This document shows, piece after piece, positions 338 to 49,031 of a DNA stretch of 64,000 nt. Every line of letters starts with the position of its first letter. Positions within the stretch are counted from its first letter, which is position 1. Below the pieces are notes generated by a model, which worked only from the letters and a program-made list of their open reading frames with translations, was not told where the DNA came from and ran no database searches. Made by a program: the position numbers and the translations under genes. The DNA is from Perkinsus chesapeaki ATCC PRA-425 (lineage: Eukaryota > Protista > Perkinsozoa). Where the stretch lies: positions 1-64,000 of the forward strand of contig JAAPAO010000056.1 in assembly GCA_013115145.1 (NCBI GenBank). Direction: 5' to 3'.

Positions 338-861
338 ATGGCCATCATGACGAGCACAGCAACCGGATCATCTACATCCCCTCGTTCGATTTTAACTCCT
401 TCTATACCTTCGTCCATTGCTGATAGCTTTTCACCTAAGTCGGTCCGGTCAGATAGAAGCGGTGAGATTCCTGGCGGTCGGCCATTGTAGAAGCTAGTTA
501 CTTTGCAGGTATTGAAATCGTCCGCCGTTCGAAGGTGCATTCTATATCCTTTGCGGATGAAGTCACTGATCACTCTGGCTGTCGGCAATCGTTGGAGTTC
601 GTGCATCCCGTCGAATGCTACAAAGTAAGGTTGATGGTGTATCCGGCATGCCGTACTGTATATAGTGGCAAGCAACTCACCTCCTTTGCTCCTCAGGATT
701 TGAATAGGTTGCACGGCTTTGGTCCACGCAGTACAGAGTTTCCTGCGAAGAAGAAAAGCTGTTTGATAGGCTTCAAAAAGTTCCTCTCCTCCCTCTTCAC
801 CGCGAACGACTGCAGGAATTCCTGCCACAGTGGTTATCGTACTAGTGTATATTACGCTTAA
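338..861 (+). CDS. Small RVxF-like (putative PP1-docking) protein, family copy 1; exons 338-461, 509-624, 697-861
   Basis: GT-AG introns join an open frame: MAIMTS..SPRSILTP..|GIEIVRRSKVHSISFADEVTDHSGCRQSLEFVHPVECYK|DLNR..SCLIGFKKFLSSLF..VYYA*. Exon 2 (116 nt) and exon 3 (165 nt) match copies 2 and 3 in length exactly. Confidence 0.85.
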
Positions 862-1643
862 GTTGTTTCACTTCCTCACAGTTGTACCTTCGCTTAGTCG
901 CTCTAGTCATGTCGGTTGTACAAAGCGATTTACGCTTCGCCAGGAAGCTATCAGGACACTGACAATTCCATGTCTGCAAGTTATCAACATAGATGTCTTA
1001 AGTTCTCTTTATTCCTTTTCTTTTGGTATAGTTCTCCACGTTATTGCCCTGCTGAGTGGCGCAAGTTGTGTCATTGTTTCCCTCTCTACAATAGAAGAGT
1101 CCACACCAAGTGAAGTATGCTGGGGTAGTTTTTTAAAAGTAAATGGAAATAGGAGGTAGCTCCTCTAGTATTTGTCATCTACCTGCAATCGCCGTGTATG
1201 CAGAAGGTCAAGGTTACCCGACCTCCAGCTCGGCCTTGTCAGTGATAGTTTGATCGGCTCGCACATCTTTTGATAGATTAGCTCGTAGGCTTAGCTCCCC
1301 GTATTATAAAAGTTAGTTACTGTCTCTATATCTAATGAGGTTTGCATATGAGTGTCCCCAGCCCGGCTGTGTTGCGTTATGATATTCTTGTGGACTTCGA
1401 TTATCTCTTTTGGTACTCGCATCTTGCCTGCAATTTGTTAATGAATTTTCTTTGTTATCACCTGTATCGTTGGAGGAAGGTTCTTCCCTAGCTGAAGTGA
1501 GTAGTTCAATCCCTACACAACGCTTCGTTGCGAGTCAAATATCTTTAGAATTTGCCGTGCTAGTGCGGCCTATGTATTTTCCGGTTTTCCTTGGTAAGTT
1601 TTCCTATCAAAGTCTGACTTAGTTTTTTCGTATAAATATTAGT

Positions 1644-2160
1644 ATGAGTGTCCCCGGTGCGCCAACTGCGTTATCTCCTCGGTCGATCTTGACGTCAACT
1701 GTAGCTTCGTCAGTTTCTGAAGATTCTTCGCCGCGATCGATACGCTCGGACAGGAACGGTAAGATTCTTCGCGTTTTTGGGGAGAATTCTTGGTGCTTCG
1801 AATCATCACGGTAACACACTCTTTTTAGGAAGAGAAATTGTCCCTCGTTCAAAGGAGCACTCCATATCCTTTGCGGACGAGATTCCCGACATTTCTGGTA
1901 GCCCGCAGTCTCTGGAGACGGTTTATCCTGTTGAATGTTACAAGGTGAGCTATGCCGACTATAAGCCTTGCTACATAAACGGCATCTTCTCGTAGGAGTT
2001 AAACCGTTGCGACAGCTTCGAAGCACGTGATACTGAGTTTCCTGAGAAGAGGCAAAGTTGCTTGGCTGGTTTCAAAGAGTTCCTTTACCTTCTTTTCACG
2101 GCGAGTGATGCCCCGGACGATACATATGTCGATTTTGCTCGCAATGCCTACTACGTCTAA
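1644..2160 (+). CDS. RVxF-like family copy 2; exons 1644-1758, 1829-1944, 1996-2160
   Basis: MSVPGAPTALSPRSILT..|GREIVPRSKEHSISFADEIPDISGSPQSLETVYPVECYK|ELNR..SCLAGFKEFLYLLF..AYYV*. Intron phases (1, 0) are the same as in copy 1. Confidence 0.88.
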
Positions 2161-3339
2161 GCTGTAGCCCTCCACGGAGAGAGATGGCGCCTTCAGTGCA
2201 TCGCGACAACGTTTATATTCGGCTGGTGAGGCTGAGGAAACTCCGCTTTTTATGGGGTCATTGTTTTCACTTTTGATCAACATGCACAATGGTTCAAAGC
2301 TATTGCCGATGCAACTGAAGGCGTCCTTGCTGGGCAGTTGTGATGTTATTTTCATTTGATATTCTGAATACCACCTGCACAGCTACAGTGATCACTAATG
2401 TGGTTTTAATTACCGTGTGCGGTGAATCGTCTATTTTATCAAGACAGTAACCGTTGTGCCAGCAACAATAGCAACATTAAATCTTGAAACTATTTTATCG
2501 CAATATTATATGTTTGAAGTTATCTCTATCCGCTTTGTATTTTAAGCCGTGCACTTAGTAGGAGTCCGTTCTTTACTCCTACGTTGTGATCACACCTAAC
2601 TACGACTGTCCTTCTGATAATGGAAGAGTCAGTCTCCAGCTTGCTTGAGAGCGTTCGTCTATTGATGTGCTATTCAACCAGAGCCCGTCTTGGGTATCTT
2701 CTTTTTTCCGCGGGAACGCGTTTTGATAATAAATCGCTAGAGGAGGTGTAACCTCCAGTCTGTTCTGAGCTGTCTTGTCATCTCTTTGCAGCTGTCGAGC
2801 TAGCGGTGAGCGACGGTTGTCTAAACTTACTCCTGCTTCACTTGTACCACGCAGTAAGTTATCATTTAAAGTAGCGCGTCGCTGAAGCATTGAATATTAT
2901 AATAATTGTGGTCATCCGTTCTCTCTGTATTTAATGAGATTAGCGTACAAGCTCTTTCAAGCTGAGCAGTGTCGAGTTGGCAGTTTGCGACGGCTTCCAA
3001 ACGTAGCTTAGCTGCTTCGCTCGAGGATTCCGTACAATGTGTTTTAGTGCGTTTGTTAGTTTCTTTAACGCGTTGCTTTGCGTGATCAGCTTTCGCATGA
3101 CGGGATTTGGAATTGAGTTTTGTGCGAGTACAGCACAGTTTTACACAATGCGTCCATTCGTAAAGCGTTTCGACTTAGCGCGCGCCCGGGGTAGTCAAAT
3201 TGTCTTCGTTGGACACAAAAACAGATCCTAATCACGAAGTTGGAAGATATTTCCTGGGATCGGAGGGTGTAATGTGGGAAGAAGTAGTGGTGTTTGCCAG
3301 GAAGTACATTAATATCCCCAATTTCCCCATTAAATAATC

Positions 3340-3891
3340 ATGGATAGATCTATTGATACCACATCCACCGAATCATCATATCCCCGTTCAATTCTGACGT
3401 CTCGTGGGTCGTCGTTGGACACGGCAGATTCGTTAAATTCCCCACGCTCGGCGCGCTCGGACAGAAACGGTAAGATTCTCGGGAAAACGTGAAGATATCT
3501 CGTCTCTACTGCGGGTTATCTGCCAGTAAAGAAGAGTTTAGGGAGTCTTTGTTTCAGGTAATGAAATCGTTCCGCATTCAAAAGAGCATTCCATATCATT
3601 CGCGGATGAAATTACCGATGAATCCGGAAGCCCGCAGTGCCTGGAAACCGTCTATCCCGTGGAGTGCTACAAGGCAAGTTTCATCGGTTGTGAGCCTCGC
3701 TGTACATAACACGGTTGCCTTTGCAGGAACTGAATCGCTCGCTTAGCTTCGAGCCTCGTGATGCGGAGTTTCCTGAGAAGAAGCAGAGCTGCTTGGGTGG
3801 TTTCAAGGAGTTCTTGCACCTTCTATTCACTTCGAGCGATCCTATGGAAGGCGACTATGCAGGCCTGCGGACCGAGTCTTACTATATGTAA
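3340..3891 (+). CDS. RVxF-like family copy 3; exons 3340-3469, 3558-3673, 3727-3891; intron 2 is GC-AG
   Basis: MDRSID..YPRSILT..|GNEIVPHSKEHSISFADEITDESGSPQCLETVYPVECYK|ELNR..SCLGGFKEFLHLLF..SYYM*. The donor AAG|GCAAGT sits at the position homologous to the GT donors of copies 1 and 2. Confidence 0.87.
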
Positions 3892-4082
3892 GCTATCTGC
3901 CCTGCCCAACCATACACCGCATTTTTATGAAGACGTAGTCTATTTGATGGAATTGAATTGAAGCGCTGAGATGTCGATTCTCAGTAGTTAGCATGTCACT
4001 TTTTCTCTCAATCAAACCGCTTTTAGCTGTCGTTTCGCATGCTATGTGCTGTCGATGCCATTGTATAACGTAGTGCGCTATT

Positions 4083-5380
4083 TCAAGTCAAATTGAGGGT
4101 GTCACTGGTGGTAATGTTTATCAGTGTTGCTGAGGTAGTGTCGTTAAAGCCTCCTATCTCGCGATGTTTTACATGTGTACCACTATGAATACCATGTGGG
4201 TTTCTCTTATGTCGATGAGGCGCACTTCGGCGTTGGTCTCTCGCATTGTTCCTGCATGTGCTTAGTGAGTGGCACTGTCCCCTTTTCCAGCTTCTGAGTG
4301 TTACATACGTCTCTATTGCATGTTTCTGAGCTCGTCTCGACTGTCCTACCGGTTTCTGTACAATGACGATAGTAAACATAATACTATCGCCTGTGTTGAC
4401 TCATTCAGTTTCCCATTGACGTATTCGCATGTTAGCATACATTGTTCTTGTGTGTTGTTGTACAGACGCTAATACTGCGGTTTTTTTCTCGAGAAAAGTG
4501 ACTGTCATGTTGCATGTCATTGCAACAACGTGTGCAATGCTGCTTCCATCACATTGTGTAGTAATGATCATAATCATACCAAAAAGTTTTCTTGTTGTTT
4601 CTCGTTATTGTTACGGTTGTTGATGAAGTTCCTATGTGGAGCGTCGCTCTCCCGTCTCCTTTTCATACCAGTACACCCCGTAATAGTTATAATACGCCAT
4701 AATGTATTATCGTAATGTGACGAGCAGTAGCGTCTAGCTCGTTAGAGCGCGCTTCTCTCAGTTATTCATAGTAATAATAATAATCTACTTAATATGTATT
4801 AGTCAGTGCCGTAAGTGGTACCGTAGTAGTAGTAGTAGAACTTCTGAACGTTATGTCATCTATTAGTCGGTGGTTGTTGTTATTGCAATTCAGTACTACT
4901 AGGCTGTCATGCGATTCGTAACTAGCCTAGCTTGGTATGTTGTAATACCTTATCATCATCAACGGCTATGCTTCCAGTAAGCGATGGTTATGGAACCTCG
5001 CTCCTGTTGTTTTTGTGCTACCCTCCAGCAAGTAGCACACTTATCTGATCTTATCACTGTTACATTTGTTGTTCTTGTTTAACTTATAGTAGCCGTTACT
5101 TGGTACGCTCGTTCCGCACGGTGGATTTGCCGGTTTCGGGCTATCTTTCATCTCTCCTATTGATGACGTCGATGTCGGTCTAAATGCTGCTGCTGCGGCA
5201 AGTGTTGAGTTTACTAGAGGAGTGGGGAGTTCTAAGGGATCAGATGTTACTAGCTTGAATTAGTCTTCGCTAGAGGTGTTCCATGGTCACAGGATTTCTA
5301 TGGATGGATGCATCGTTTTAGCTTTGTCTTCGTCAACTTGTTGGTTATTGGCTCTTTGTAGTTTGGTTGTAGCTTTCCGT
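4083..5380 (-). other. Low-complexity region with possible minus-strand exons (Asn/Thr/Ser-rich)
   Basis: The + strand is rich in gtt/agt/tag triplets. The minus strand gives short exon-like frames such as MKRRRESDAPHRNFINNRNNNEKQQENFL|GTATGA (~4590-4680). No family was recognised. Confidence 0.25.
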
Positions 5381-5381
5381 A

Positions 5382-6146
5382 ATGAAAGACCCGCTTGTCA
5401 ACCGCAAAGGTCAGAAAGTAAATCCGTCAGGAGGAATCCTGAAGCACAATGTTGACGATGATCAACACTGTCATTCCACTCTTGCGGAAGATACACCTAC
5501 ATACCGCAGTTTGGGATCAGCGTCAACGCTTGACAGTCTCTTTTTCGGTTCAATAGACGAGGATCAAGGTAACTTAACTCGATCTAATTCGCATTTCTAG
5601 TATATGTGCGTTTGTGGTAGAGAGTTGTAAAGCACAAATGACGCGCCTAGTAGGTTATGAACTTGCCGTTTTCCTATCACTCTTTCGTTCCTTTGTACTT
5701 CATATAACTTGATGACCTCGTTAAATGTGTATTGAAAGTATCGCTATAATATATCTCCTATTTTCGGCCACTTTCCGGAGCCTTCCTGGAAGTGTCGGTT
5801 TCCTCTGGTATCTGTATGTGCTGTTTCAGGTTTTGGTGATGTTGCTAGGAAGGGCAATACAAGTGACAGGCATGTTAGATTTGCGGACGAATGCCCCGGA
5901 TGCGAGCACCAACTCGAGGACGTGCGTAATGTACCCAGCGTGAAGGTGAGATGTACCCGATTCAATCGAGATTGCAGATGCAAGTTTCATCAGGACTTTA
6001 CCTACGCTACAACGTATCGTCCGCCGGAGTATGTCGATCCGTCCTGCGGTTCAACCTGTCTTACCGCGATGAAGCTGCTCTTCAATTGCATTGGCGGAAA
6101 AATGGACTCTCATACGAGCGCGGTTCCTAAATCTGCTATCAATTAA
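5382..6146 (+). CDS. RVxF-like family copy 4 (divergent; GILK + RHVRF); exons 5382-5568, 5830-5945, 5994-6146
   Basis: MKDPLV..SGGILKH..|GFGDVARKGNTSDRHVRFADECPGCEHQLEDVRNVPSVK|DFTY..STCLTAMKLLFNC... Exon 2 is again 116 nt with the same intron phases. The exon 1 link is inferred from phase. Confidence 0.75.
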
Positions 6147-6790
6147 ATGTATTTATAATCGTTAACCTGACGATGTCTTCAAAGTGATATAATCTGTTTG
6201 TAAGGAGCTCTAGTATGAGCAATTATATTCGAAAAGTGCGCTTCTTGCTGAGCGAGAGCGCCTTCCTTTCCCAGCCGAGTCGAGTCAGAGTCAAGCGGCT
6301 CGATCTCGCAGTATTTCAATTATATCTGTTGTTGCAACGTGCATTCCCGTCGGCGGCGATCATCCACGCTACTGCTGATGATGATTGTCGTAGCTGCCAA
6401 CACGTAGTGGCTGCTTGTCTATTATTATCTTTTATCTTAATCATCGTGGTCTCAACATTAATCGTTCTCGGTACTTGTAGTTAAGTAGAGTTCCGAGCAA
6501 CACGCAATACGTAACACCCGTAACGCCTACTGGTTCATCAAAGTTCCTTAACACTTCTGCTGCTAATAATAATACTGATCTTAATATCGTGCCACTAAGT
6601 GGCTATTGCCAAACCATCTCATGCAGCTTGCACCGTGCAAGTGAGGAGGAGGAAGTTGGGAATAACGACGTCATTGGTTAGCATCGCGCAGGCTGCGATG
6701 TCAATGGTCACCATCATACAGTATCTTACTATCCATGTTGCGTTTTTATATAATTAGCTGCTCAACTAGCCATCTGTTTTCTTCTCCGGC

Positions 6791-7319
6791 ATGTGCTCGA
6801 CCCGAGCGACATCGGCAAGCTCGTCAATACAAGAGCAAGGCTCAGTTGAGCAGGGCAGTCGCGATGCCGGTGGAATCCCAGGTTCAAGCGGGGAATCGTC
6901 ATTAGAGGAGACTAATAAGTGTAGCAGTACAGCTTCCGGACCACCAAGGAGAGACAGGTTTGGTAAGCTTTGTGAAGTATACGGTTCCCTCGGACCTCTG
7001 CACAGGCCGCCCAATAACGTCGCGCTCGAAGAACCACTCGTTGTGTTTTGCCGACGAGGTTCCAGGATCAGACCGCCAGCCGCTAGTATGCACGGTAAAC
7101 GTGGAAAGTTTCAAAGTAAGCTTCAATGAAGGATTTCCGGTACGGCGGCTCTCGTAGGCCCACAATCGCATTCACAGTCGGCCGCAGCCTGATGGTGCAA
7201 GCAAAGACGTTACCACTGCGATAGTTAAGGAATCAATGAATCAGTCCATGACTTCTGGCACCAGTATTGCCGATTCGGATTCAAGTCCTATACGTATTAA
7301 ATTTTATGTTTGCCTGTAG
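6791..7319 (+). CDS. RVxF-like family copy 5; exons 6791-6962, 7006-7115, 7158-7319
   Basis: ..GRPITSRSKNHSLCFADEVPGSDRQPLVCTVNVESFK|AHNR..; canonical 43- and 42-nt introns in phases 1 and 0. Confidence 0.78.
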
Positions 7320-7667
7320 TCGTAGTCATTTATAGTATTACATTGTCCCCCCCACTGCCACGGTTTGATTGCTTGCTCAGATTATTGTTGTTACCTAGCC
7401 TCACCCTCCACATGTTTGGCCTGGTCGCAGGGGTGTACGAGGTATTTTTTGATTTGTGATTCTCGTGATGTTATCATGATAAGACGTTGTAAAGGAGTGA
7501 GGCGCCTAGCGACGCCGCCGTCACTGCTCTTTGCTATATCACCAGTCATCAGTATGGATTATACACACAAGAGCGTCACGTTCTTGTCAATGCTATGTGT
7601 GAATCATCCCCTATGTTTGGTTCACATTCCGGTCTGCTGATGCATCACAGTAGTTGTTTATTATATA

Positions 7668-8097
7668 ATGTTCTCAGCTATCCCTTCACCATTATCCCCT
7701 TCGATTAGCAGGTCGGAGAGAACTGAGAGCGGCAGCACTTGTGATACCTGTAAGTCCGTCACTTGTCGCTTGTCTTTATTCTCAATCTGCATTCCCCTTA
7801 CATCCGTCCCCTGTATGTTTACCTGATCTCCCTATGCATCACCTTCGTGCTGTGCGTGTATGCCGATTAAGACCGTTACATTCTCTTTTGCTTTGAAATG
7901 TAGCCTCAAAGGGGTATTGCTGGTGTGTAATTGATTGAACTCTGTGCGATATGTCGACACGTTGTTTATATTCAGCGGTGTCGGATGACGATATCAGCGG
8001 ACGTAGAAGGTCAAAAACGCATTCTATATGTTTTGCTGATGAAGCTCCTGGAGGGAAGGGCGAGCTTGCTCACATTCGCTATGTGGAGAGCTTCAAG
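7668..8097 (+). CDS. RVxF-like family copy 6; exons 7668-7749 and 7976-8097, terminal exon unresolved
   Basis: MFSAIPSPLSPSIS..|SVSDDDISGRRRSKTHSICFADEAPGGKGELAHIRYVESFK|GT. The phase-1 junction is consistent with the family. No clear homologous exon 3 was found. Confidence 0.65.
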
Positions 8098-8829
8098 GTG
8101 CTAAAGAGAGGCAGTGGGGCTACTGGAATGGTTGTTCATCTTCAATTGTATTTTATTAGCTCAAAATGTGTTATAGGGTAGGAAGTATGTGATGTGAAAT
8201 AAGCGGTAGAAGATGGAGCTCAGCTCAGTGGTTGGTTCTTCCTAGAGAGTGTTATATAATGTAGATTTAGGGATTGGCTTATATAATAAAGATGAAATTG
8301 AAAAGCCGTAACCAACGGAGCTATACGACATATAGCATATATATGTCAACACTCCTGACTCTTTTATGACATCGTAGTAGTTCATAGGATTCTCAACTGG
8401 GATAGTGACGAGTACGACAACTTACTCCTGTTCCAGTATACCGTACCTGGGATGCCTTTCGCTATTTCGAAATTTTTTCATGCGTGCCACAGTTTTTTAC
8501 GTTCCATCTCTCCAACTCGCCGTACTTTTCCGGCGGTCTAGAGCACGTCAGCGTATCGTACCGTGTTTTTGCATTTAGGAACACAACAAGGCATTCAATT
8601 ACGAGCCTGAAGTCCCTGTAGCCTCCGAGTTCATAAACCGGCAGCGTCGCTACCGTCGCGCGCCGCGAAATATCTCACGTATCATGACTATGCCCTATAC
8701 TTCGCCCTCCTTTCGAGGCAGGGAGCTCTCGCTCGAGCTGGCATCCAGCTGCGCCTGGAATCGTGTGTAAATTCTTGGCGCATGTTGGGCAAGGATAACT
8801 TGTCCTATTTTGTCGTTGGATTAAAGTAC

Positions 8830-42069: not shown

Positions 42070-43550
42070 CTAGAAAGTAACAATAGACTCATAACCACCC
42101 ACTACGATCATCAATACACTCAAGGCCATCATGGCGAAGAGAATAGTAAGCTCTATCCTACTGGACTTCCACACAGTCATAAACGAACCTTCATTGAGGA
42201 CACGCATTCTTATATAGAAGATACCAGGAAGTATGCCTGCCATAGCTGTCATAGTGAAAACACTTAGCAGGTCTATGAGCTTCTGGACACTAGGAACAAC
42301 AATAGCGATAACAAGAGTAATCAACACTAGTATAGTGCGTACAGTGATACGCTTGATAGTCGGTACCATTCCCTTGGCCTCCTCTGGGTCATCTACCCGG
42401 TATGGAAGAAGTGGTAATAACAGATACTCCAACGAGGCGGCGATAGGGAACAATAATACAATGTAATGAGGAAAGCATAGACATATAAGTGAAATGACAC
42501 ATGTGTATCCCCAACCATCTAAACCTCCTGTAGGGGGTGCAATCCGATCAATAATGGGAACATTCACCAACGAGTTGCCGTAACCGAAATAGCCACATCC
42601 AGCAATGCCGCCGTAGATCACAAAAATGCACAAGTACGAGACAGTGGCAACTTTCGGTAATGCACTTGGTGTTTTCATATCCCGAATGAGGGTAGCAAGC
42701 ACGTTGGTGACATGGTATGAGAGCATCGCATTGCCAAAGGAAACGCCGAATTCTAGAGGATTCCATATCCACCAGTCATAGTCGATCTCTTCATCGGTAG
42801 TGACTCCATTGGTGATACCGTTGACAACGATAAGAATGAACAAGACAATAAGGGCCGCCATGCCGAATGCGGATACATAGGAAACTTCATTAAGCGATTT
42901 GAGCCATGTTAGAGGCCAGCAGATCGCTGCCCATATGCAGCACCACACCTTACTAGACAGACCAGCCATTGGAATTAACTTCTGAGTGTTTTCTCCCAAC
43001 AGCAACAATAAAGTAGAGCAGCAACCAGTCATAGTAATATGAACTATTCCAGCAGTGAGAACAGCGCCTATGGGACCAAAGCATACATAACCAAGCTGTT
43101 CATAGGTGTTGATGGGTTCTCCTTTAGGGTGACTTGTATAAGCTACATAAATCTTTCCTACCATATGGTTGGATATTACAGCCACAATAAAGAGAATAAG
43201 TAAACCACCAAACCAGCCGCAGTTTGCGAATGTAGTAGGCAACATAATAACGCCAATGCCTAACAAAGATACATATCAAAACCACCTTTGAATGGGAGAT
43301 GCTTACCAATTGCCGTTAGAATTAGATTAAATACAGATCTTATATTACTGCACTTCCCTTGAGGTGCCGTTGAAGGATTAGTAGTTTCTAGATCAGCAGA
43401 AGTAGCCTTAGAGGTAACGTCGGTGGTGTCAGTATTGGCGGTGGTAGTAGTGGCACTAGTCTCAGAGAGTGTCACCTCCTGGGTGAATATCTCCGAATCG
43501 CTTGAAGCATGATGCTGTTTTTTGAAGTACCCAAGACACGTACCGGCCAT
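42070..43550 (-). CDS. Amino acid transporter (AAAP/Aa_trans family) copy A; exons 43550-43307 and 43259-42070
   Basis: KCSNIRSVFNLILTAIG|IGVIMLP..CGW.GG, INTYEQLG, SFGNAMLSY, GYFGYG; about 10-11 hydrophobic segments; single phase-1 intron. Confidence 0.95.
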
Positions 43551-43994
43551 ACACAAAGAGAGGGGGAATCAGCGTTCCCACCGTTATTCGTCTCAACTAA
43601 AAAGTCAATATCATCTTCGAGCTCGCAAGAGACTCCTATGGCTCCAGAGCACAAAATGCCGCTAGCTCCAGAAGGTGGTGAAGGTGAACTCAAGACGTGG
43701 GGTGGATATTAGCTATAGAAACGATACCTGATATCAAACTTGAAAGGAACGTCAGATGGTGCCCGCACGGCATCGTCTAGGCTATTCGCTAGCTAGCTGA
43801 TAGGAGACATGAACTTTTAAGGAGTATAAACAGCAGTAGATAGGATTCGTCTTCAGTTCGTGAAGTCGAGGAAGTAAAATGCTTCGCTCAAATCGCCAGC
43901 ACAGCGAATGATCTTCGTACTTGAAACGGAACAAGAGGCAGAACGTTCCGTCCCGGAACATGGGGGCCAGTTCTGCCATAAATGAGATTGAAGA

Positions 43995-45392
43995 TTAGAA
44001 ATCAACAATCGACTTATAACCACCGGCTCCCATAACTAATAGACAAAGGAGAGTGAGAGCACACAGAAGGCACATTTCCAGTCGATGAGCCTTCCATACA
44101 GCCTTCAATGAACCCTCGTTGTATACACGTATCTTTGTATAGAACAGAGCAGGGAGGACTCCAGCCATAGCGATCATGGTAAAGACACCCATAAGATTTA
44201 TCAACTTGTCTACACTTGGAACGACAATAGCGATAACAAGGGTGATGGCTACCAGCACAGTGCGTGCTACGATTCTCTTTATGAGATCGCGCTTTGCCGT
44301 GCTATCGACATCGATGTTAACAGCGTACTCGAGAGAGGCAGCAATAGGCATGAGGATGACCAGATAATGAGGGAAGGCCAGTAGGAGCATGGCGATCACT
44401 GCAACGTAACCCCATGCATCTAATGGCTGACCAGCCGGAGCAATACTGTTCATGATTGGAACTTCAATCAGATTCCGTCCATATCCGTAGTAACCACAAG
44501 CTCCAACGCCAACGTAGATAACGAAGACGATCAGCAAGCCTGCCGATGCGGTCTTCGGGAAGGCTGATGGGGTGATCATCTCACGGATGAGGGTGGGTGT
44601 AGCACTAGCCATCTGGTAGGAGAGAATAGCGTTACCGAATGACACAGCCCAAGTGAGGGCGTCTCCGTTGAAGAGATCATACTGGATGACCTCATCAGTG
44701 GTGATACCGTTCTCGATACCTTTGGCGGCGATGATAATGAAAAGCGCAATGACGCCTATCAAACCAACCATCGCAACATAGGAAATCTCCTTTAGAGATC
44801 TCAACCAAGAAAGGGGGAGGCATATGCAAGCCCAAATGACGCACCATACAGTAACAGAGAGCTGCGGTGCTAGCTTTTGGGTGTTCTCGCCTAATAACAG
44901 AAGTAATGTGGCGCAAACACCAGTCATAGTCACGTGCACTATAAGGGCGGTAACGATCTGGCCAACACGACCGTAGCAAACTCTGCCGAGCTCCTCGTAT
45001 GTATTAATAGGATCACCTTTTGGATGATTCGTAACAGCTTGATACAACTTGCAGACCATATAGTCCGAGAGAGCGGCGGCGACAAATAAAACCAAAATAC
45101 CACCGATCCAACCACAAGTGGCCATAACAGTAGGCAAAGTAATAACGCCCAAACCTGATAGGAAATTACCATAACAAGCGTACAAATGAGGAAAGCACTT
45201 ACCGATAGCCGTGAGCACAATGTTGACGATGGAACGAATGTTGGAACACTTATGGGAGTTGTCTTCCTCATTCGATTCTCCGGCGTTGGCCTTGGAATCA
45301 GACCAATCGCTGCTGGTAGTAGAGTCCTCTGAAAGATTTAAAGAAGCCATAGAGCCTTGGTGATGTTGTTGTTGCTTATCAGCGAGGCTCAT
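43995..45392 (-). CDS. Amino acid transporter copy B; exons 45392-45203 and 45154-43995 (48-nt in-frame intron)
   Basis: Same motifs and the same intron position (TAIG|LGVITLP) as the other copies. Confidence 0.95.
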   Translation of the reverse strand: MSLADKQQQHHQGSMASLNLSEDSTTSSDWSDSKANAGESNEEDNSHKCSNIRSIVNIVLTAIGKCFPHLYACYGNFLSGLGVITLPTVMATCGWIGGILVLFVAAALSDYMVCKLYQAVTNHPKGDPINTYEELGRVCYGRVGQIVTALIVHVTMTGVCATLLLLLGENTQKLAPQLSVTVWCVIWACICLPLSWLRSLKEISYVAMVGLIGVIALFIIIAAKGIENGITTDEVIQYDLFNGDALTWAVSFGNAILSYQMASATPTLIREMITPSAFPKTASAGLLIVFVIYVGVGACGYYGYGRNLIEVPIMNSIAPAGQPLDAWGYVAVIAMLLLAFPHYLVILMPIAASLEYAVNIDVDSTAKRDLIKRIVARTVLVAITLVIAIVVPSVDKLINLMGVFTMIAMAGVLPALFYTKIRVYNEGSLKAVWKAHRLEMCLLCALTLLCLLVMGAGGYKSIVDF

Positions 45393-46049
45393 ACGGCCAC
45401 GAAGCAAAAGAAAAGAAGAAACGCTCAAACTGGAATGATAGCCCACTACTAACCAGAAGTTCTGGTCCAGAACGACAAGTGACATCTAGCCTGGACAAAA
45501 CCATATCTGCTAGGAAGTTGACGACGGGAAAACACCAAACTTTGCCCCCGTGAGGTATTTATTGATTTTGCTATAAATGGCAAAACTTGTACGAGCGATT
45601 AGTGGGACACAGGTGCACCAGTGGATCAGTCCCCTCAGAACATCAGGCCTAACGCGAGACGAATAATGGAGTAGAGTTAATGTAGGAAACGGTAGCTCAG
45701 AGGAAGGAGCATGAAACCCGCACGGTAACACTCTCGATGGCTCAGAAAACCGAACCGGAAAAGGAACATTATGGTACGAGCAGCCCTCCTCTATGGCTAG
45801 CTACTCGAAGGATAACGTAAGAGGAGATGGAGGCTACACGCAGAAAGGGATTAGATAGGCTGCTATCGGCCCCGCTAGAGCTAACGAGATCTGAATGAAC
45901 AGGAACAGAACTGTGAACCGGGATCGCAAGGGACGCCGGCTCGAGAGTATATAACATAGGGATCTGGTTAGTTCTCCCTCGCGGAACTTATTAGCTGTTA
46001 AAAGACTTGGTCAAAGAATGAGAATATCGAGGACGGCGGCCTTTTCGCC

Positions 46050-47458
46050 TTAGAAGTTAACAATAGCGACGTAGCCTCCTGCTCCCATTAGTAGTAGGCA
46101 GAGGAGGGTTAAGATAAGCATAGTAGACATTTCAATCCAGTTGGACTTAATCACAGCCATTAGAGATCCTTTATTCAGGACTTTCATCCTAACATAGAAG
46201 AGGGCAGGCAGAATAGCAGCCATAGCGATAACGGTGAAGACGCTCATAAGGTCGATAAGGTTGTTTACACTAGGAACAGTAATAGCGATAACAAGGGTGA
46301 TAGCCACCAGAAAAGTTCTAGCCAGCGCTCTCTTAATGAAGTCGCGCTTTGACGAGCTGTTAATATCCACCTTAATAACGTACTCAAGTGAGGCAGCAAT
46401 AGGCATTAGTAGGACGAGATAGTGGGGGAAGGCCAGAGCTAACATGGATATCACCAGAGCATAGCCCCAAGCATTCAGAGGCTCATCGGCTGGTGCAATG
46501 CTGTCGAGAATCGGCACTTCGATAAGGTCCCGTCCGTAGCCGTAGTAGCCACATGCTCCTACACCAACATAGATAGCAAACACTATGAAGAAACTCACAG
46601 TTGCAACCTTGGGAAAGGCCGACGGGGTCTTCATTTCTCGTAGCAGATTAGGAGTGGCACTGGCTATCTGGTAGGAGAGAACCGCGTTACCTATCGATAT
46701 AGCCCAATTGAGGGGGTCATTGCTGATAAGGTCGTACTGGATGTCCTCATCAGTGGTGATGCCGTTCTCGATACCTTTGGCGGCGATGATAATGAAAACG
46801 GCAATGATGCCGAGGAGGCCAACCAGCGCAACATAGGACAAATCCTTCAGAGATCGAATCCACGACAGAGGCGTGCAGACGGCAGCCCAGATGACGCACC
46901 ATACAGTAACAGAGAGCTGCGGTGCTAGCTTTTGGGTGTTCTCGCCTAGTAACAGAAGTAGCGTGGAGCAAACACCAATCATAGTGACGTGCACTATAAG
47001 GGCGGTAACGATCTGGCCAACACGACCGTAGCAAACTCTGCCGAGCTCTTCGTAGGTATTAATAGGATCACCTTTTGGATGATTCGTAACAGCTTGATAC
47101 AACTTCCAGACCATATAGTCCGAGAGAGCGGCACCAAAGAATAGGACAATAACGCCACCGATCCAGCCACACTTCGCCATGACGGTCGGGAGGGTGATGA
47201 CGCCCAAACCTGAAATAAAACGAAATCGAACCCGATACCTCGCGCAAGAAAGTCCAACGACTAAACCACTACGCCGTTCATCTTACCGATAGCTGTGAGA
47301 ATGATATTCAAAATTGATCGAAGGTTAGAGCATTTTCCCTCATCAGGATCGTCCATCACGGGAATGCTAGGCTTGCTGTCCAGGCTGTCCTCCTCAGCTA
47401 CTGAGGATGCAGTCCGAATAGTAGTAGTAGGAGAGTCAGATAGATTCATCTGGCTCAT
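46050..47458 (-). CDS. Amino acid transporter copy C; exons 47458-47287 and 47209-46050
   Basis: KCSNLRSILNIILTAIG|LGVITLP; full transmembrane core. Confidence 0.95.
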
Positions 47459-47705
47459 TATGGCCGTTAATAAGAACAACTACCGATATCTACTTCGCAA
47501 ATGCACTGCAACGCAACAACATCCTAATTTGATAAAACCTATAATTGTCGGGCCTCCACGTGGTACCGATTGCACCGAAGTTATAGCAGACAGAAAGATA
47601 CGATCTTGGGTAATGTATAAGGCCTAGTGGAGGTTTCGGAAACATATTGGAGAAGCGTGTTGACGCTACCAGTAATACGGGTTAGAACATTCTAGGGAAT
47701 CGGAC

Positions 47706-49031
47706 TCAGAAATTTTTTATTGCTGAATAGCCACCAACTCCCATGATAACGACAGCTAAAAGTGTCAGGAAGACCAATAGTACAAACTCTGCTGTACGGT
47801 TCTTGAAGACTGCCATGAGCGAGCCTTGATAAGTGAGAGCCCGCATGCGAAGGCAAAGCAGAGCTGGTAAAATCATGGCAATTACAACCATGGTGAAAAC
47901 GCCCAGTATGTCGACTAACTTTTCGACCGATGGAACTACTACAGCCACTATGAGAGTGACTCCAACGAAACAAGTACGAATGACAATCCTCTGTAGAGTG
48001 CTCCGCACAGACGTACTTAACACGTCTACTTTAAAAGCGTATTCGACTGAAGACACGATCGGTAAAAGCATAACGAGGTAGTGTGGAAAACACATAAATA
48101 ATATAGCAATTACCAGACAATAACCCCAAGCATCCAAGGCCTTTCCGGCCGGAGCGATACTATTAATAATCGCATTATTTATCAGACTTCTACCATAACC
48201 GAAGTAGCCACAGCAACCAACTAGAAAGTAAATAACAAAAGTCAGTCCAAGCCCGATTGACGCCACCTTCGGGAACGCACTCGGAGTCCTCATATCGCGG
48301 ATTAGTGTCGGTGTGATGTTAGCTATTTGATAGGCCAATATAGAGTTACCAAAGGACACCGTCCAAGCCAGAATATCTGAGCCTAGCAGGTCATAGGTCA
48401 CATCACCGTGCTCTTCAATGCCTTGCACTATGCCTTGTGCGGCGATGATAACCAGCACGGCAATAATGCCCACCAGACCAAGCGACGATACATAGGTTAT
48501 TTCCTTGAAGGACCTCAACCACGAGAGGGGAGTGCAGACAGCCGCCCAGACGCACGTCCAGGCCTTAGCGGAGATCTGTGGAAAAATCTTCTGTGTATTC
48601 TGACCCAGCAAGAGCAGCATCCCCGAACAGGCCCCGGTCATGGTCACGTGGACAACGAGTAAAGTGATGACCTGCCCGACTCTGCCGTAGCAGACTTTGC
48701 CCAGTTTCTCGTAAGTGTATATAGGTTCCCCGGTAGGATGGATGCTGACTGCGGTATGGAGCTTGCAAACGAGATAATCAGTAATAACGGCTCCTATACA
48801 AAGTATGATAGCACCGCCGATCCACCCACACCGGGCGACCACGCTTGGTAATGATACGATTCCCAAACCTGAAAAAGGTAAACATGAATTGTTTCGCTCC
48901 GCTCAAGACTTACCAATGGCTCCCAGTATAACGTTTATAACCGCGTGCATGTTGCTACATTTCTTACTGGCCTCTGCATCAACTTTCGCCTCAACCGCAT
49001 GGGAAGCATTTCCGACGCTGACGTTGGCCAT
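47706..49031 (-). CDS. Amino acid transporter copy D; exons 49031-48914 and 48868-47706
   Basis: KCSNMHAVINVILGAIG|LGIVSLP; full transmembrane core; most divergent copy with a short N-terminus. Confidence 0.93.

What the first reader, a model, noticed from the sequence alone, without database searches (positions are those of the whole stretch)
338..8097. Tandem cluster of six small, catalytically empty proteins built around a PP1-docking-like module
None of these genes appears intact in the ORF track because each is split by two introns. Spliced, all six share the exon-2 module [K/R]xH[S/V][I/L/V]xFADE-x8-10-L-x-x-[VTI]-x-x-V-[E/P]-[C/S]-[Y/F/V]-K. They also share intron phases (1 then 0), and exon 2 is exactly 116 nt in four copies. 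The module resembles the RVxF + phi-phi-xF docking string of PP1 glycogen-targeting subunits (recalled as RRVSFAD..LVSVKEF in PPP1R3A/GM), but no CBM21 or other folded domain is present. Copies 1-3 also carry a SILK-like 'PRSILT' upstream. Inference: this is a lineage-expanded family of ~120-150 aa PP1 targeting or inhibitory subunits with variable N- and C-termini, a combinatorial phosphatase-routing system I do not recognise as described.
Basis: partly seen in the sequence, partly recalled or inferred. Interest (0 to 1): 0.8.

Follow-up and report, generated by a model that had tools for sequence, protein, structure and literature searches.

The report
Small PP1-docking-like protein gene cluster
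Six neighbouring, expressed three-exon genes of the oyster/clam parasite Perkinsus chesapeaki encode small disordered proteins that belong to an unnamed family found across alveolates, whose conserved core looks like a string of docking motifs for protein phosphatase 1, though binding has not been tested.

Summary
The window is Perkinsus chesapeaki contig JAAPAO010000056.1. It carries exactly six three-exon genes (338-8770, + strand) that share the K-x-H-S-[IL]-x-F-A-D-E ... L-x-x-V-x-x-V-E-[SC]-[FY]-K core.

- **Gene models.** Four copies match GenBank models exactly. Copies 3 and 6 are unannotated. All eight introns of copies 3-6, including a GC-AG intron, are confirmed by transcript contigs.
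- **Family range.** The family is not Perkinsus-specific. An exhaustive profile search found 193 small proteins, including Vitrella and the ciliate Stylonychia. None is named, and none has a Pfam or PDB match.
- **Family core.** Family-wide the core is R-x-D-R-x-G-x-x-I ... K-x-H-[KR]-[IV]-[TS]-F-A-D ... L-x-x-[VI]-Φ-x-V-E-S-Y-K-x-Y-N, which contains a canonical RVxF.
- **SILK motif.** A SILK-like motif occurs seven times more often than chance, mostly exactly 32-33 residues upstream.
- **C-terminus.** 85% of complete relatives end in a CaaX lipidation box. The six window genes lack it.
- **Structure.** AlphaFold finds no fold.

The PP1-docking reading is therefore strengthened but still unproven (about 0.5). 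Descent from PPP1R3 is not supported. This is a new variant of a known kind, of moderate interest. Two first-reader notes on other pieces of this genome describe similar SILK+RVxF micro-proteins.

The parts
338..861 (+). Copy 1 (FOL47_008590). Exons 338-461, 509-624, 697-861. 134 aa. SILT at 386-397, HSISF at 538-552.
   Evidence: Model. Identical to GenBank protein P0001. HMM E 9e-19.
1644..2160 (+). Copy 2 (FOL47_008591). Exons 1644-1758, 1829-1944, 1996-2160. 131 aa. SILT at 1683-1694, HSISF at 1858-1872.
   Evidence: identical to P0002. AF2 model.
3340..3891 (+). Copy 3, not annotated in GenBank. Exons 3340-3469, 3558-3673, 3727-3891. 136 aa. Intron 2 (3674-3726) is GC-AG. SILT at 3388-3399, HSISF at 3587-3601.
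   Evidence: Both joints are seen in transcript contigs of runs X1/X2. 80% identical to P. olseni P0003.
5382..6146 (+). Copy 4 (FOL47_008592). Exons 5382-5568, 5830-5945, 5994-6146. 151 aa. GILK at 5433-5444, RHVRF at 5868-5882. Spliced-leader acceptor AG at 5360-5361.
   Evidence: Joints and the SL-like 5' loose end. Motifs.
6791..7319 (+). Copy 5 (FOL47_008593). Exons 6791-6962, 7006-7115, 7158-7319. 147 aa. HSLCF at 7035-7049. Spliced-leader acceptor AG at 6768-6769.
7668..8770 (+). Copy 6, not annotated in GenBank. Exons 7668-7749, 7976-8097, 8579-8770. 130 aa. HSICF at 8020-8034.
   Evidence: Joints 7749>7978 and 8095>8577 in transcript contigs. Exon 3 matches P. olseni P0008 (73%) and P. 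marinus P0009 (69%).

Best explanation
SHOWN
- The six genes are old, expressed paralogues under purifying selection.
- They encode about 130-150 aa proteins without a predicted fold.
- They belong to an unnamed family of small proteins present in perkinsids, chromerids and ciliates.
- The family core is R-x-D-R-x-G-x-x-I-(4)-K-x-H-[KR]-[IV]-[TSC]-F-A-D-E-V-(6-9)-L-x-x-[VI]-Φ-x-V-E-S-Y-K-x-Y-N.
- Most complete relatives end in a C(C)-a-a-X lipidation box. The Perkinsus copies do not.

INFERRED
- The core is a multi-motif docking string for the PP1 catalytic subunit.
- [KR]-[IV]-x-F would sit in the RVxF pocket, and the invariant Asp at F+2 would pair with PP1 Arg261 as G(M) Asp70 does.
- The invariant Leu would act as the 'lid', and [VI]-Φ-x-V would act as phi-phi[xF].
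- In some members a [GS]-I-[LIM]-[KR] motif 32-33 residues upstream would sit in the SILK pocket.
- Canonical members would hold PP1 at membranes through prenyl/palmitoyl anchors.
- The six anchor-less Perkinsus paralogues, with their different N- and C-termini, would act as soluble targeting or competing/inhibitory subunits.
- Ser at the RVxF 'x' position (copies 1-3) would allow release by phosphorylation.
For: - Genes and splicing.
- Selection: pN 0.19-0.30 against saturated pS 0.75-0.78 among copies 1-3. DNA similarity is limited to exons.
- Family breadth: 193 hits at E<=1e-3, including Vitrella CEM03583.1 and Stylonychia CDW80255.1.
- Column frequencies: F 94%, D(+2) 95%, [IV] 89%, K/R before it 67%, S/T at x 65%, L 74% (96% aliphatic), V/I 98%, E 91%, S 91%, K 96%, N 91%.
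- SILK-like motif in 29/236 members against 4.0±1.9 in shuffles. In 22 of them it lies exactly 32-33 residues before the Phe, in two divergent subgroups.
- Match to the G(M):PP1 contacts RVSF65-68, D70, L76, V79-K80, F82 (PMC6235537).
- Definitions of phi-phi[xF] and SILK from PMC9813921.
- More than 50% of RVxF motifs have S/T at x (PMC10066265).
- Disorder: Atlas model pLDDT 0.56. AF2 gives only isolated bridges in the core. No fold match, best Z 2.8.
- CaaX: 153/180 complete relatives have Cys at -4, and a2 is I/L/V in 148/153.
Against:
- RVxF-like strings are common by chance in single proteins.
- Five of the six window copies have His-Ser in place of the basic pair, and copy 5 has Leu at the Val/Ile position.
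- 'SILT' lacks the Lys of SILK.
- The RVxF-to-phi-phi spacer (13-16 residues) is longer than in G(M), which was already called the longest known.
- The strongly conserved R-x-D-R-x-G-x-x-I and E-S-Y-K-x-Y-N blocks match no known PP1 motif.
- AF2 gives pLDDT of about 90 to the copy-2 core, which could mean a small autonomous fold that buries these residues.
Confidence: 0.5

Rival explanations
1. The conserved 45-residue core is a binding module, or a small autonomous mini-domain, for a partner other than PP1. Its likeness to RVxF/SILK/phi-phi would then be coincidental. The proteins would be adaptors of unknown function, membrane-anchored in most alveolates.
For: - Invariant positions go beyond what PP1 SLiMs need: R-x-D-R-x-G-x-x-I, His at -2, and E-S-Y-K-x-Y-N.
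- AF2 pLDDT is about 90 over residues 31-75 of copy 2.
- The Perkinsus copies relax the basic RVxF position but keep everything else.
- There is no homology to any solved PP1 regulator.
Against: - Canonical [KR]-[IV]-[ST]-F-x-D occurs in two thirds of members.
- SILK-like motifs are enriched sevenfold at a fixed spacing.
- The L-x-x-V-Φ-x-Φ register is identical to G(M).
- The models show no regular secondary structure and have no fold match.
Confidence: 0.33
2. They are degenerate glycogen/starch-targeting PPP1R3-type subunits that lost the CBM21 domain, that is, true homologues of PPP1R3.
For: There is motif-level likeness of F-A-D ... L-x-x-V-x-x-Φ to G(M) 65-82.
Against: - None of about 250 family members carries CBM21 or any other Pfam domain.
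- Profile searches of PDB sequences, which include PP1:G(M) entries, return nothing.
- The family has its own conserved blocks and a CaaX tail that PPP1R3 lacks.
Confidence: 0.03
3. A sub-variant of the PP1 reading: the proteins are inhibitors of the Inhibitor-2/Inhibitor-3 type rather than targeting subunits. The segment after the docking string (K-x-Y-N, or the terminal Cys pair in canonical members) would reach the PP1 active site. This would resemble I-2 HYNE, or the I-3 CCC motif that lies 17 residues after KVEW.
For: - The order SILK then RVxF is as in I-2 and I-3.
- Canonical members end in CC/CxC-I-F, reminiscent of I-3 CCC-I-Y.
- K-x-[YH]-N is nearly invariant.
Against: - Cys sits exactly at -4 with an aliphatic a2 in 85% of complete relatives. 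Some members replace Cys by Trp-Trp, which fits a lipid or hydrophobic anchor better than a metal ligand.
- There are no Pfam hits to the I-2 or Ypi1 families.
- The six window copies lack the Cys pair.
Confidence: 0.1

Closest known systems
PPP1R3A (G(M)) PP1-anchoring segment, residues 64-85 (structure paper PMC6235537)
   Same: - [IV]-x-F-A-D, with Asp at F+2.
- A Leu followed three residues later by a [VI]-Φ pair and two residues after that by another hydrophobic residue. This is the same register as L76 / V79-K80 / F82.
- Ser at the 'x' position in copies 1-3.
- Disordered when free.
   Different: - No CBM21 domain and no detectable homology.
- The spacer between Phe and Leu is 3-6 residues longer.
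- There are extra conserved blocks before (R-x-D-R-x-G-x-x-I) and after (E-S-Y-K-x-Y-N).
- The proteins are only 130-150 aa long.
Inhibitor-2 and Inhibitor-3 (PPP1R2, PPP1R11/Ypi1): small disordered PP1 inhibitors
   Same: - Small size and disorder.
- A SILK-type motif N-terminal to an RVxF-type motif.
- The I-3 Cys cluster followed by Ile-Tyr resembles the CC-x-I-F ends of canonical family members.
   Different: - No Pfam match to either family.
- The Cys pair of the relatives is strictly C-terminal (CaaX geometry) and is absent from the window copies.
- The spacing and flanking blocks differ.
TIMAP / MYPT3 (PPP1R16B/A): prenylated PP1 targeting subunits (recalled from my own knowledge)
   Same: A K-V-x-F motif combined with a C-terminal CaaX box, which is the logic of a lipid-anchored PP1 targeting subunit. 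This would apply to the canonical alveolate relatives.
   Different: - Those proteins are large ankyrin-repeat proteins and are unrelated in sequence.
- The six Perkinsus genes have no terminal CaaX.

Membership tests
Unnamed alveolate small-protein family (defined here by profile A4) | Significant match to the 48-position core profile | tested here: met
   All six copies score E 1e-17 to 3e-21 in the six-frame scan. 193 library proteins score E<=1e-3.
Unnamed alveolate small-protein family (defined here by profile A4) | C-terminal C-a-a-X (Cys at -4, aliphatic a2) | tested here: not met
   153/180 complete non-Perkinsus relatives have it. The six window proteins end in YYA, YYV, YYM, AIN, VCL and NRV. 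Copies 1-4 keep an internal C-L-x-x that aligns with the CaaX Cys.
PPP1R3 glycogen-targeting subunits | CBM21 carbohydrate-binding domain | tested here: not met
   No Pfam hit at E<=10 on any exon product or on 10 relatives.
PPP1R3 glycogen-targeting subunits | Sequence homology to PPP1R3 chains | tested here: not met
   Profile searches of PDB sequences return only chance hits, E 0.5-0.8.
RVxF-class PP1-interacting disordered proteins (a functional class) | RVxF motif, [RK]-x(0,1)-[VI]-{P}-[FW] (Wakula consensus, recalled from memory) | tested here: inconclusive
   Met by copy 4 (RHVRF) and by about two thirds of the family. Copies 1-3 and 6 have H-S-I-x-F and copy 5 has H-S-L-C-F, which fit only looser definitions.
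RVxF-class PP1-interacting disordered proteins (a functional class) | SILK motif, G/S-I/V-L/V-K (PMC9813921) | tested here: inconclusive
   Copy 4 has GILK, which meets it. Copies 1-3 have SILT, which lacks the Lys. Copies 5 and 6 have none. Family-wide there is an enrichment at a fixed spacing.
RVxF-class PP1-interacting disordered proteins (a functional class) | Intrinsic disorder of the docking region when unbound | tested here: met
   AF2 pTM is 0.27 and 0.34, with only isolated beta-bridges in the core. Atlas model pTM is 0.19. There is no fold match.
RVxF-class PP1-interacting disordered proteins (a functional class) | Physical, motif-dependent binding to PP1c | not testable with these tools
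Inhibitor-2 (IPP-2) and Inhibitor-3/Ypi1 | Match to the Pfam family models | tested here: not met
   No hit at E<=10 or E<=1.

The most novel reading that the evidence does not exclude
Alveolates possess a previously undescribed, ancient family of small PP1 regulators. Their docking string combines SILK, RVxF and phi-phi[xΦ] with two new conserved elements, R-x-D-R-x-G-x-x-I and E-S-Y-K-x-Y-N. These proteins are normally lipid-anchored. Perkinsus has converted them into a syntenic cluster of anchor-less paralogues with varied termini that route or titrate PP1 in the cytosol.
Probability: 0.4. Interest if true: 0.65.

Novelty: new variant of a known kind. Interest (0 to 1): 0.5.

Why it matters
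PP1 gets its specificity from hundreds of unrelated docking proteins, and very few are known outside animals, fungi and Plasmodium/Toxoplasma. If this family binds PP1, three things would follow.

- It would be a conserved alveolate regulator class in ciliates, chromerids and perkinsids, mostly membrane-anchored.
- Its two unexplained conserved blocks could reveal new PP1 surface sites.
- It would give a handle on phosphatase control in Perkinsus, a major shellfish parasite.

If it does not bind PP1, it is still a widespread, unnamed and strongly conserved 45-residue module that deserves a Pfam entry and a partner search.

Tried and rejected
- **Pfam** on every exon product and on 10 relatives found nothing.
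- **PDB sequence profile searches** with A2 and A4 gave only chance hits, a GGDEF protein and ribosomal protein S9.
- **Foldseek and VIA-align** on the copy-2 model gave nothing. The best Z of 2.8 fell on the C-terminal helices only.
- **ESM Atlas look-alikes** were unnamed ciliate-dominated clusters at 0.89. A PP1c_bdg (PF10488) cluster appeared only at rank 38 with score 0.83, below significance.
- **First word search**, using the copy-1 read-through (intron 2 is in frame and has no stop), found only the protein itself. Fragment-row alignments were needed to reach the paralogues.
- **First fragment alignment (A1)** misaligned the divergent termini and was discarded.
- **My first regex-based SILK count** was unreliable. 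It was replaced by an HMM-anchored count.
- **Literature searches** for the motif strings, and for prenylated RVxF proteins in alveolates, found no description.
- **Other phosphatase motifs**, checked by eye: calcineurin PxIxIT/LxVP and B56 LxxIxE patterns do not fit the invariant positions.
- **Possible seventh copy or pseudo-exon** at about 1348 and at 107-129: similarity is weak (48% and 74% over short stretches) and there is no HMM hit.
Full report
**Origin and gene models**

A word search with the copy-1 read-through peptide hit one protein, FOL47_008590 of Perkinsus chesapeaki. Its contig is JAAPAO010000056.1 of GCA_013115145.1, and the window starts at position 1 of that contig.

Six-frame motif scans and a six-frame HMM scan find exactly six copies of the module. 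All lie on the + strand between 338 and 8770. Nothing else in the 64 kb scores better than E 5.

I modelled each gene as three exons:

| Copy | Exon 1 | Exon 2 | Exon 3 | Length |
|---|---|---|---|---|
| c1 | 338-461 | 509-624 | 697-861 | 134 aa |
| c2 | 1644-1758 | 1829-1944 | 1996-2160 | 131 aa |
| c3 | 3340-3469 | 3558-3673 | 3727-3891 | 136 aa |
| c4 | 5382-5568 | 5830-5945 | 5994-6146 | 151 aa |
| c5 | 6791-6962 | 7006-7115 | 7158-7319 | 147 aa |
| c6 | 7668-7749 | 7976-8097 | 8579-8770 | 130 aa |

- Intron phases are 1 then 0 throughout.
- Exon 2 is 116 nt in c1-c4, 110 nt in c5 and 122 nt in c6.
- c1, c2, c4 and c5 are letter-for-letter the GenBank proteins.
- c3 and c6 are not annotated in that assembly.

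**RNA evidence**

I laid transcript contigs on 3300-8800. They came from two runs of the same organism code (X1, X2) and from a spliced-leader-primed 454 metatranscriptome (X3).

- They show every modelled joint of c3, c4, c5 and c6.
- This includes the GC-AG intron 3674-3726 of c3.
- Loose 5' ends that read as the dinoflagellate-type spliced leader abut AG dinucleotides at 5360-5361 and 6768-6769. These lie 21-22 nt upstream of the c4 and c5 start codons (SL sequences in PMC3101222). That library was SL-primed, so the leader letters themselves may come from the primer.
They rest on the GenBank models and on homology.

**Age and selection**

- Among c1-c3, synonymous sites are saturated (pS 0.75-0.78) while pN is 0.19-0.30.
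- DNA similarity is confined to exons.
- Each type has its own orthologue in other Perkinsus species:
  - c3 with P. olseni P0003, 80%.
  - c4 with P0109, 62%.
  - c5 with P0007, P0010 and P0011, 47-51%.
  - c6 with P. olseni P0008 (73%) and P. marinus P0009 (69%).
- P. olseni locus tags are adjacent: FOZ61_000888/889, FOZ60_011842/843 and FOZ63_030515/516.

The cluster therefore predates the split of these Perkinsus species. The genes are maintained by selection.

**The family is much wider than Perkinsus**

I ran an exhaustive HMMER search of 1.84 billion representatives with a 48-column core profile (A4). It returned 193 proteins at E<=1e-3.

- Nearly all are 50-210 aa, and nearly all are environmental.
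- Named members are Vitrella brassicaformis CEM03583.1 and Stylonychia lemnae CDW80255.1.
- One EukProt entry (P0167) I believe is from Oxytricha. That attribution is from memory of the GI range and is unverified.
- None has a name, a Pfam domain or a relative in the PDB.
- Literature searches found no description.

HMM-anchored column statistics over 247 members give this core:

R(79%)-x-D(82%)-R-x-G(81%)-x-x-I(82%)-x-K-G-x-K(80%)-x-H(65%)-[K 53 / R 14 / S 12 / H 9]-[I 55 / V 34]-[T 35 / S 30 / C 12]-F(94%)-A-D(95%)-E-V-(about 6)-L(74%)-x-x-[V/I]-Φ-x-V(83%)-E(91%)-S(91%)-Y(78%)-K(96%)-x-Y-N(91%)

Of 180 non-Perkinsus members with at least 12 residues after the Lys:

- 153 end with Cys at -4.
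- The a2 position is I/L/V in 148 of those 153.
- 100 of the 153 have a second Cys one or two positions upstream.

This is the geometry of a CaaX / CCaX lipidation box. A few members replace the Cys with Trp-Trp.

The six window proteins have no terminal CaaX. In c1-c4 an internal C-L-x-x aligns with the CaaX cysteine of the relatives. It is followed by a predicted helix, residues 99-112 of c2. This hints that the box was internalised by a C-terminal extension, but that is inference from a single aligned column.

**Does it look like a PP1 docking string?**

That paper reports:

- 65-RVSF-68 in the RVxF pocket.
- Asp70 salt-bridged to PP1 Arg261.
- Leu76 as a lid.
- Val79-Lys80 as phi-phi.
- Phe82 in a further pocket.

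The family has the same register: [IV]-x-F-A-D, then Leu, then [VI]-Φ three residues later, then Val two residues after that. The Phe-to-Leu spacer is 3-6 residues longer.

Further points from the literature:

- PMC9813921 states that phi-phi is often extended to phi-phi[xF], and that SILK can be G/S-I/V-L/V-K.
- PMC10066265 notes that more than half of RVxF motifs have S/T at 'x'. Here the figure is 65%.

Independent support comes from a motif count. A [GS]-I-[LIM]-[KR] motif lies upstream of the core in 29 of 236 members, against 4.0±1.9 in composition-preserving shuffles (maximum 12 in 2000). In 22 of those members it sits exactly 32-33 residues before the RVxF Phe. These fall in two divergent subgroups, the perkinsid-like G-I-L-[KR] group and the 'S-I-[ILM]-K-G-G-x-R-P-R' group. 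From memory, the SILK-to-RVxF distance in Inhibitor-2 is about 34.

In the window, c4 has GILK 62 residues upstream. c1-c3 have S-I-L-T 39 residues upstream, counted by hand from the sequences.

**Structure**

- The Atlas model of c1 has pTM 0.19.
- AF2 with family alignments gives pTM 0.27 for a canonical member.
- AF2 gives pTM 0.34 for c2.
- The core shows only isolated β-bridges, although its pLDDT reaches about 90 in c2.
- Foldseek and VIA-align find no fold, best Z 2.8.

This pattern suits a region that folds on binding. It does not exclude a small autonomous fold.

**Weaknesses of the PP1 reading**

- Nothing here measures binding.
- Five of the six window copies have H-S-[IL]-x-F, not a basic pair.
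- c5 has Leu at the Val/Ile position.
- S-I-L-T lacks the Lys.
- The two best-conserved flanking blocks, R-x-D-R-x-G-x-x-I and E-S-Y-K-x-Y-N, correspond to no known PP1 motif.

I therefore put motif-dependent PP1 binding at about 0.5. An unrelated partner or mini-domain gets about 0.33. Descent from PPP1R3 gets about 0.03, because no CBM21 is found anywhere in the family. Within the PP1 reading, targeting and inhibition cannot be separated. The I-3-like reading of the terminal Cys pair is disfavoured by its strict -4 position.

**Verdict**

- The cluster is a Perkinsus-specific, anchor-less branch of an unnamed alveolate-wide family. It is not a lineage invention.
- Novelty: a new variant of a known kind (SLiM-based PP1 regulators), pending a binding test.
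- Two first-reader notes on other pieces of this genome (s1-215586, s1-218236) describe SILK+RVxF micro-proteins that may be further members. I did not test them.

Noticed in passing
window 3892-5000: Transcript contigs cover about 1.1 kb downstream of the copy-3 stop codon, at depths equal to or higher than over the CDS. The region holds no convincing ORF (the longest is 98 aa, on the minus strand). It is either a very long 3' UTR or a separate non-coding transcript.
   Followed up: partly
window 3674-3726: The second intron of copy 3 is GC-AG and is confirmed by two transcript contigs. This non-canonical donor is the likely reason the gene is missing from the GenBank annotation.
   Followed up: yes
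window 5360-5361 and 6768-6769: Spliced-leader-like 5' ends of cDNA contigs abut AG acceptors 21-22 nt upstream of the copy 4 and copy 5 start codons. This suggests SL trans-splicing and very short 5' UTRs. The library was SL-primed, so the leader letters may derive from the primer.
   Followed up: partly
window 42070-48866, minus strand: There is a tandem array of four long ORFs, each matching the Pfam Aa_trans (PF01490) amino-acid transporter family at E 1e-47 to 6e-54.
   Followed up: no
P. olseni proteins P0004 (FOZ60_011842) and P0253 (FOZ60_011843): P0004, a P. olseni gene model, fuses the orthologues of copies 5 and 6 into one 232-aa protein with two core modules. P0253 is 246 aa, against 141 aa for its cluster mates. 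Both look like annotation read-throughs, and they confirm the conserved gene order.
   Followed up: partly
window 3730-3935 and 7978-8719: Some contigs differ from the window by 5-8%: 16 differences over copy 3 exon 3 in run X1, and 6-11 over copy 6 exons in runs X1 and X3. They may represent a second haplotype, a close paralogue or a related strain in the marine sample.
   Followed up: no
library proteins such as P0040, P0054, P0056, P0061, P0078, P0083, P0088, P0137, P0154: Many environmental family members stop right after ...S-Y-K-K-Y-N, where complete relatives often continue with Gln. This would be expected if they are ciliate genes with TAA/TAG read as stop instead of Gln by the gene caller. 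This is inference only.
   Followed up: no
L002 6001-6363: The closest CaaX-bearing relative of the Perkinsus GIL[KR] subgroup (P0018) is encoded without introns in a gene-dense 93.6-kb environmental eukaryotic contig, next to THOC2 and an enoyl-CoA hydratase-like gene. The organism is unknown.
   Followed up: partly
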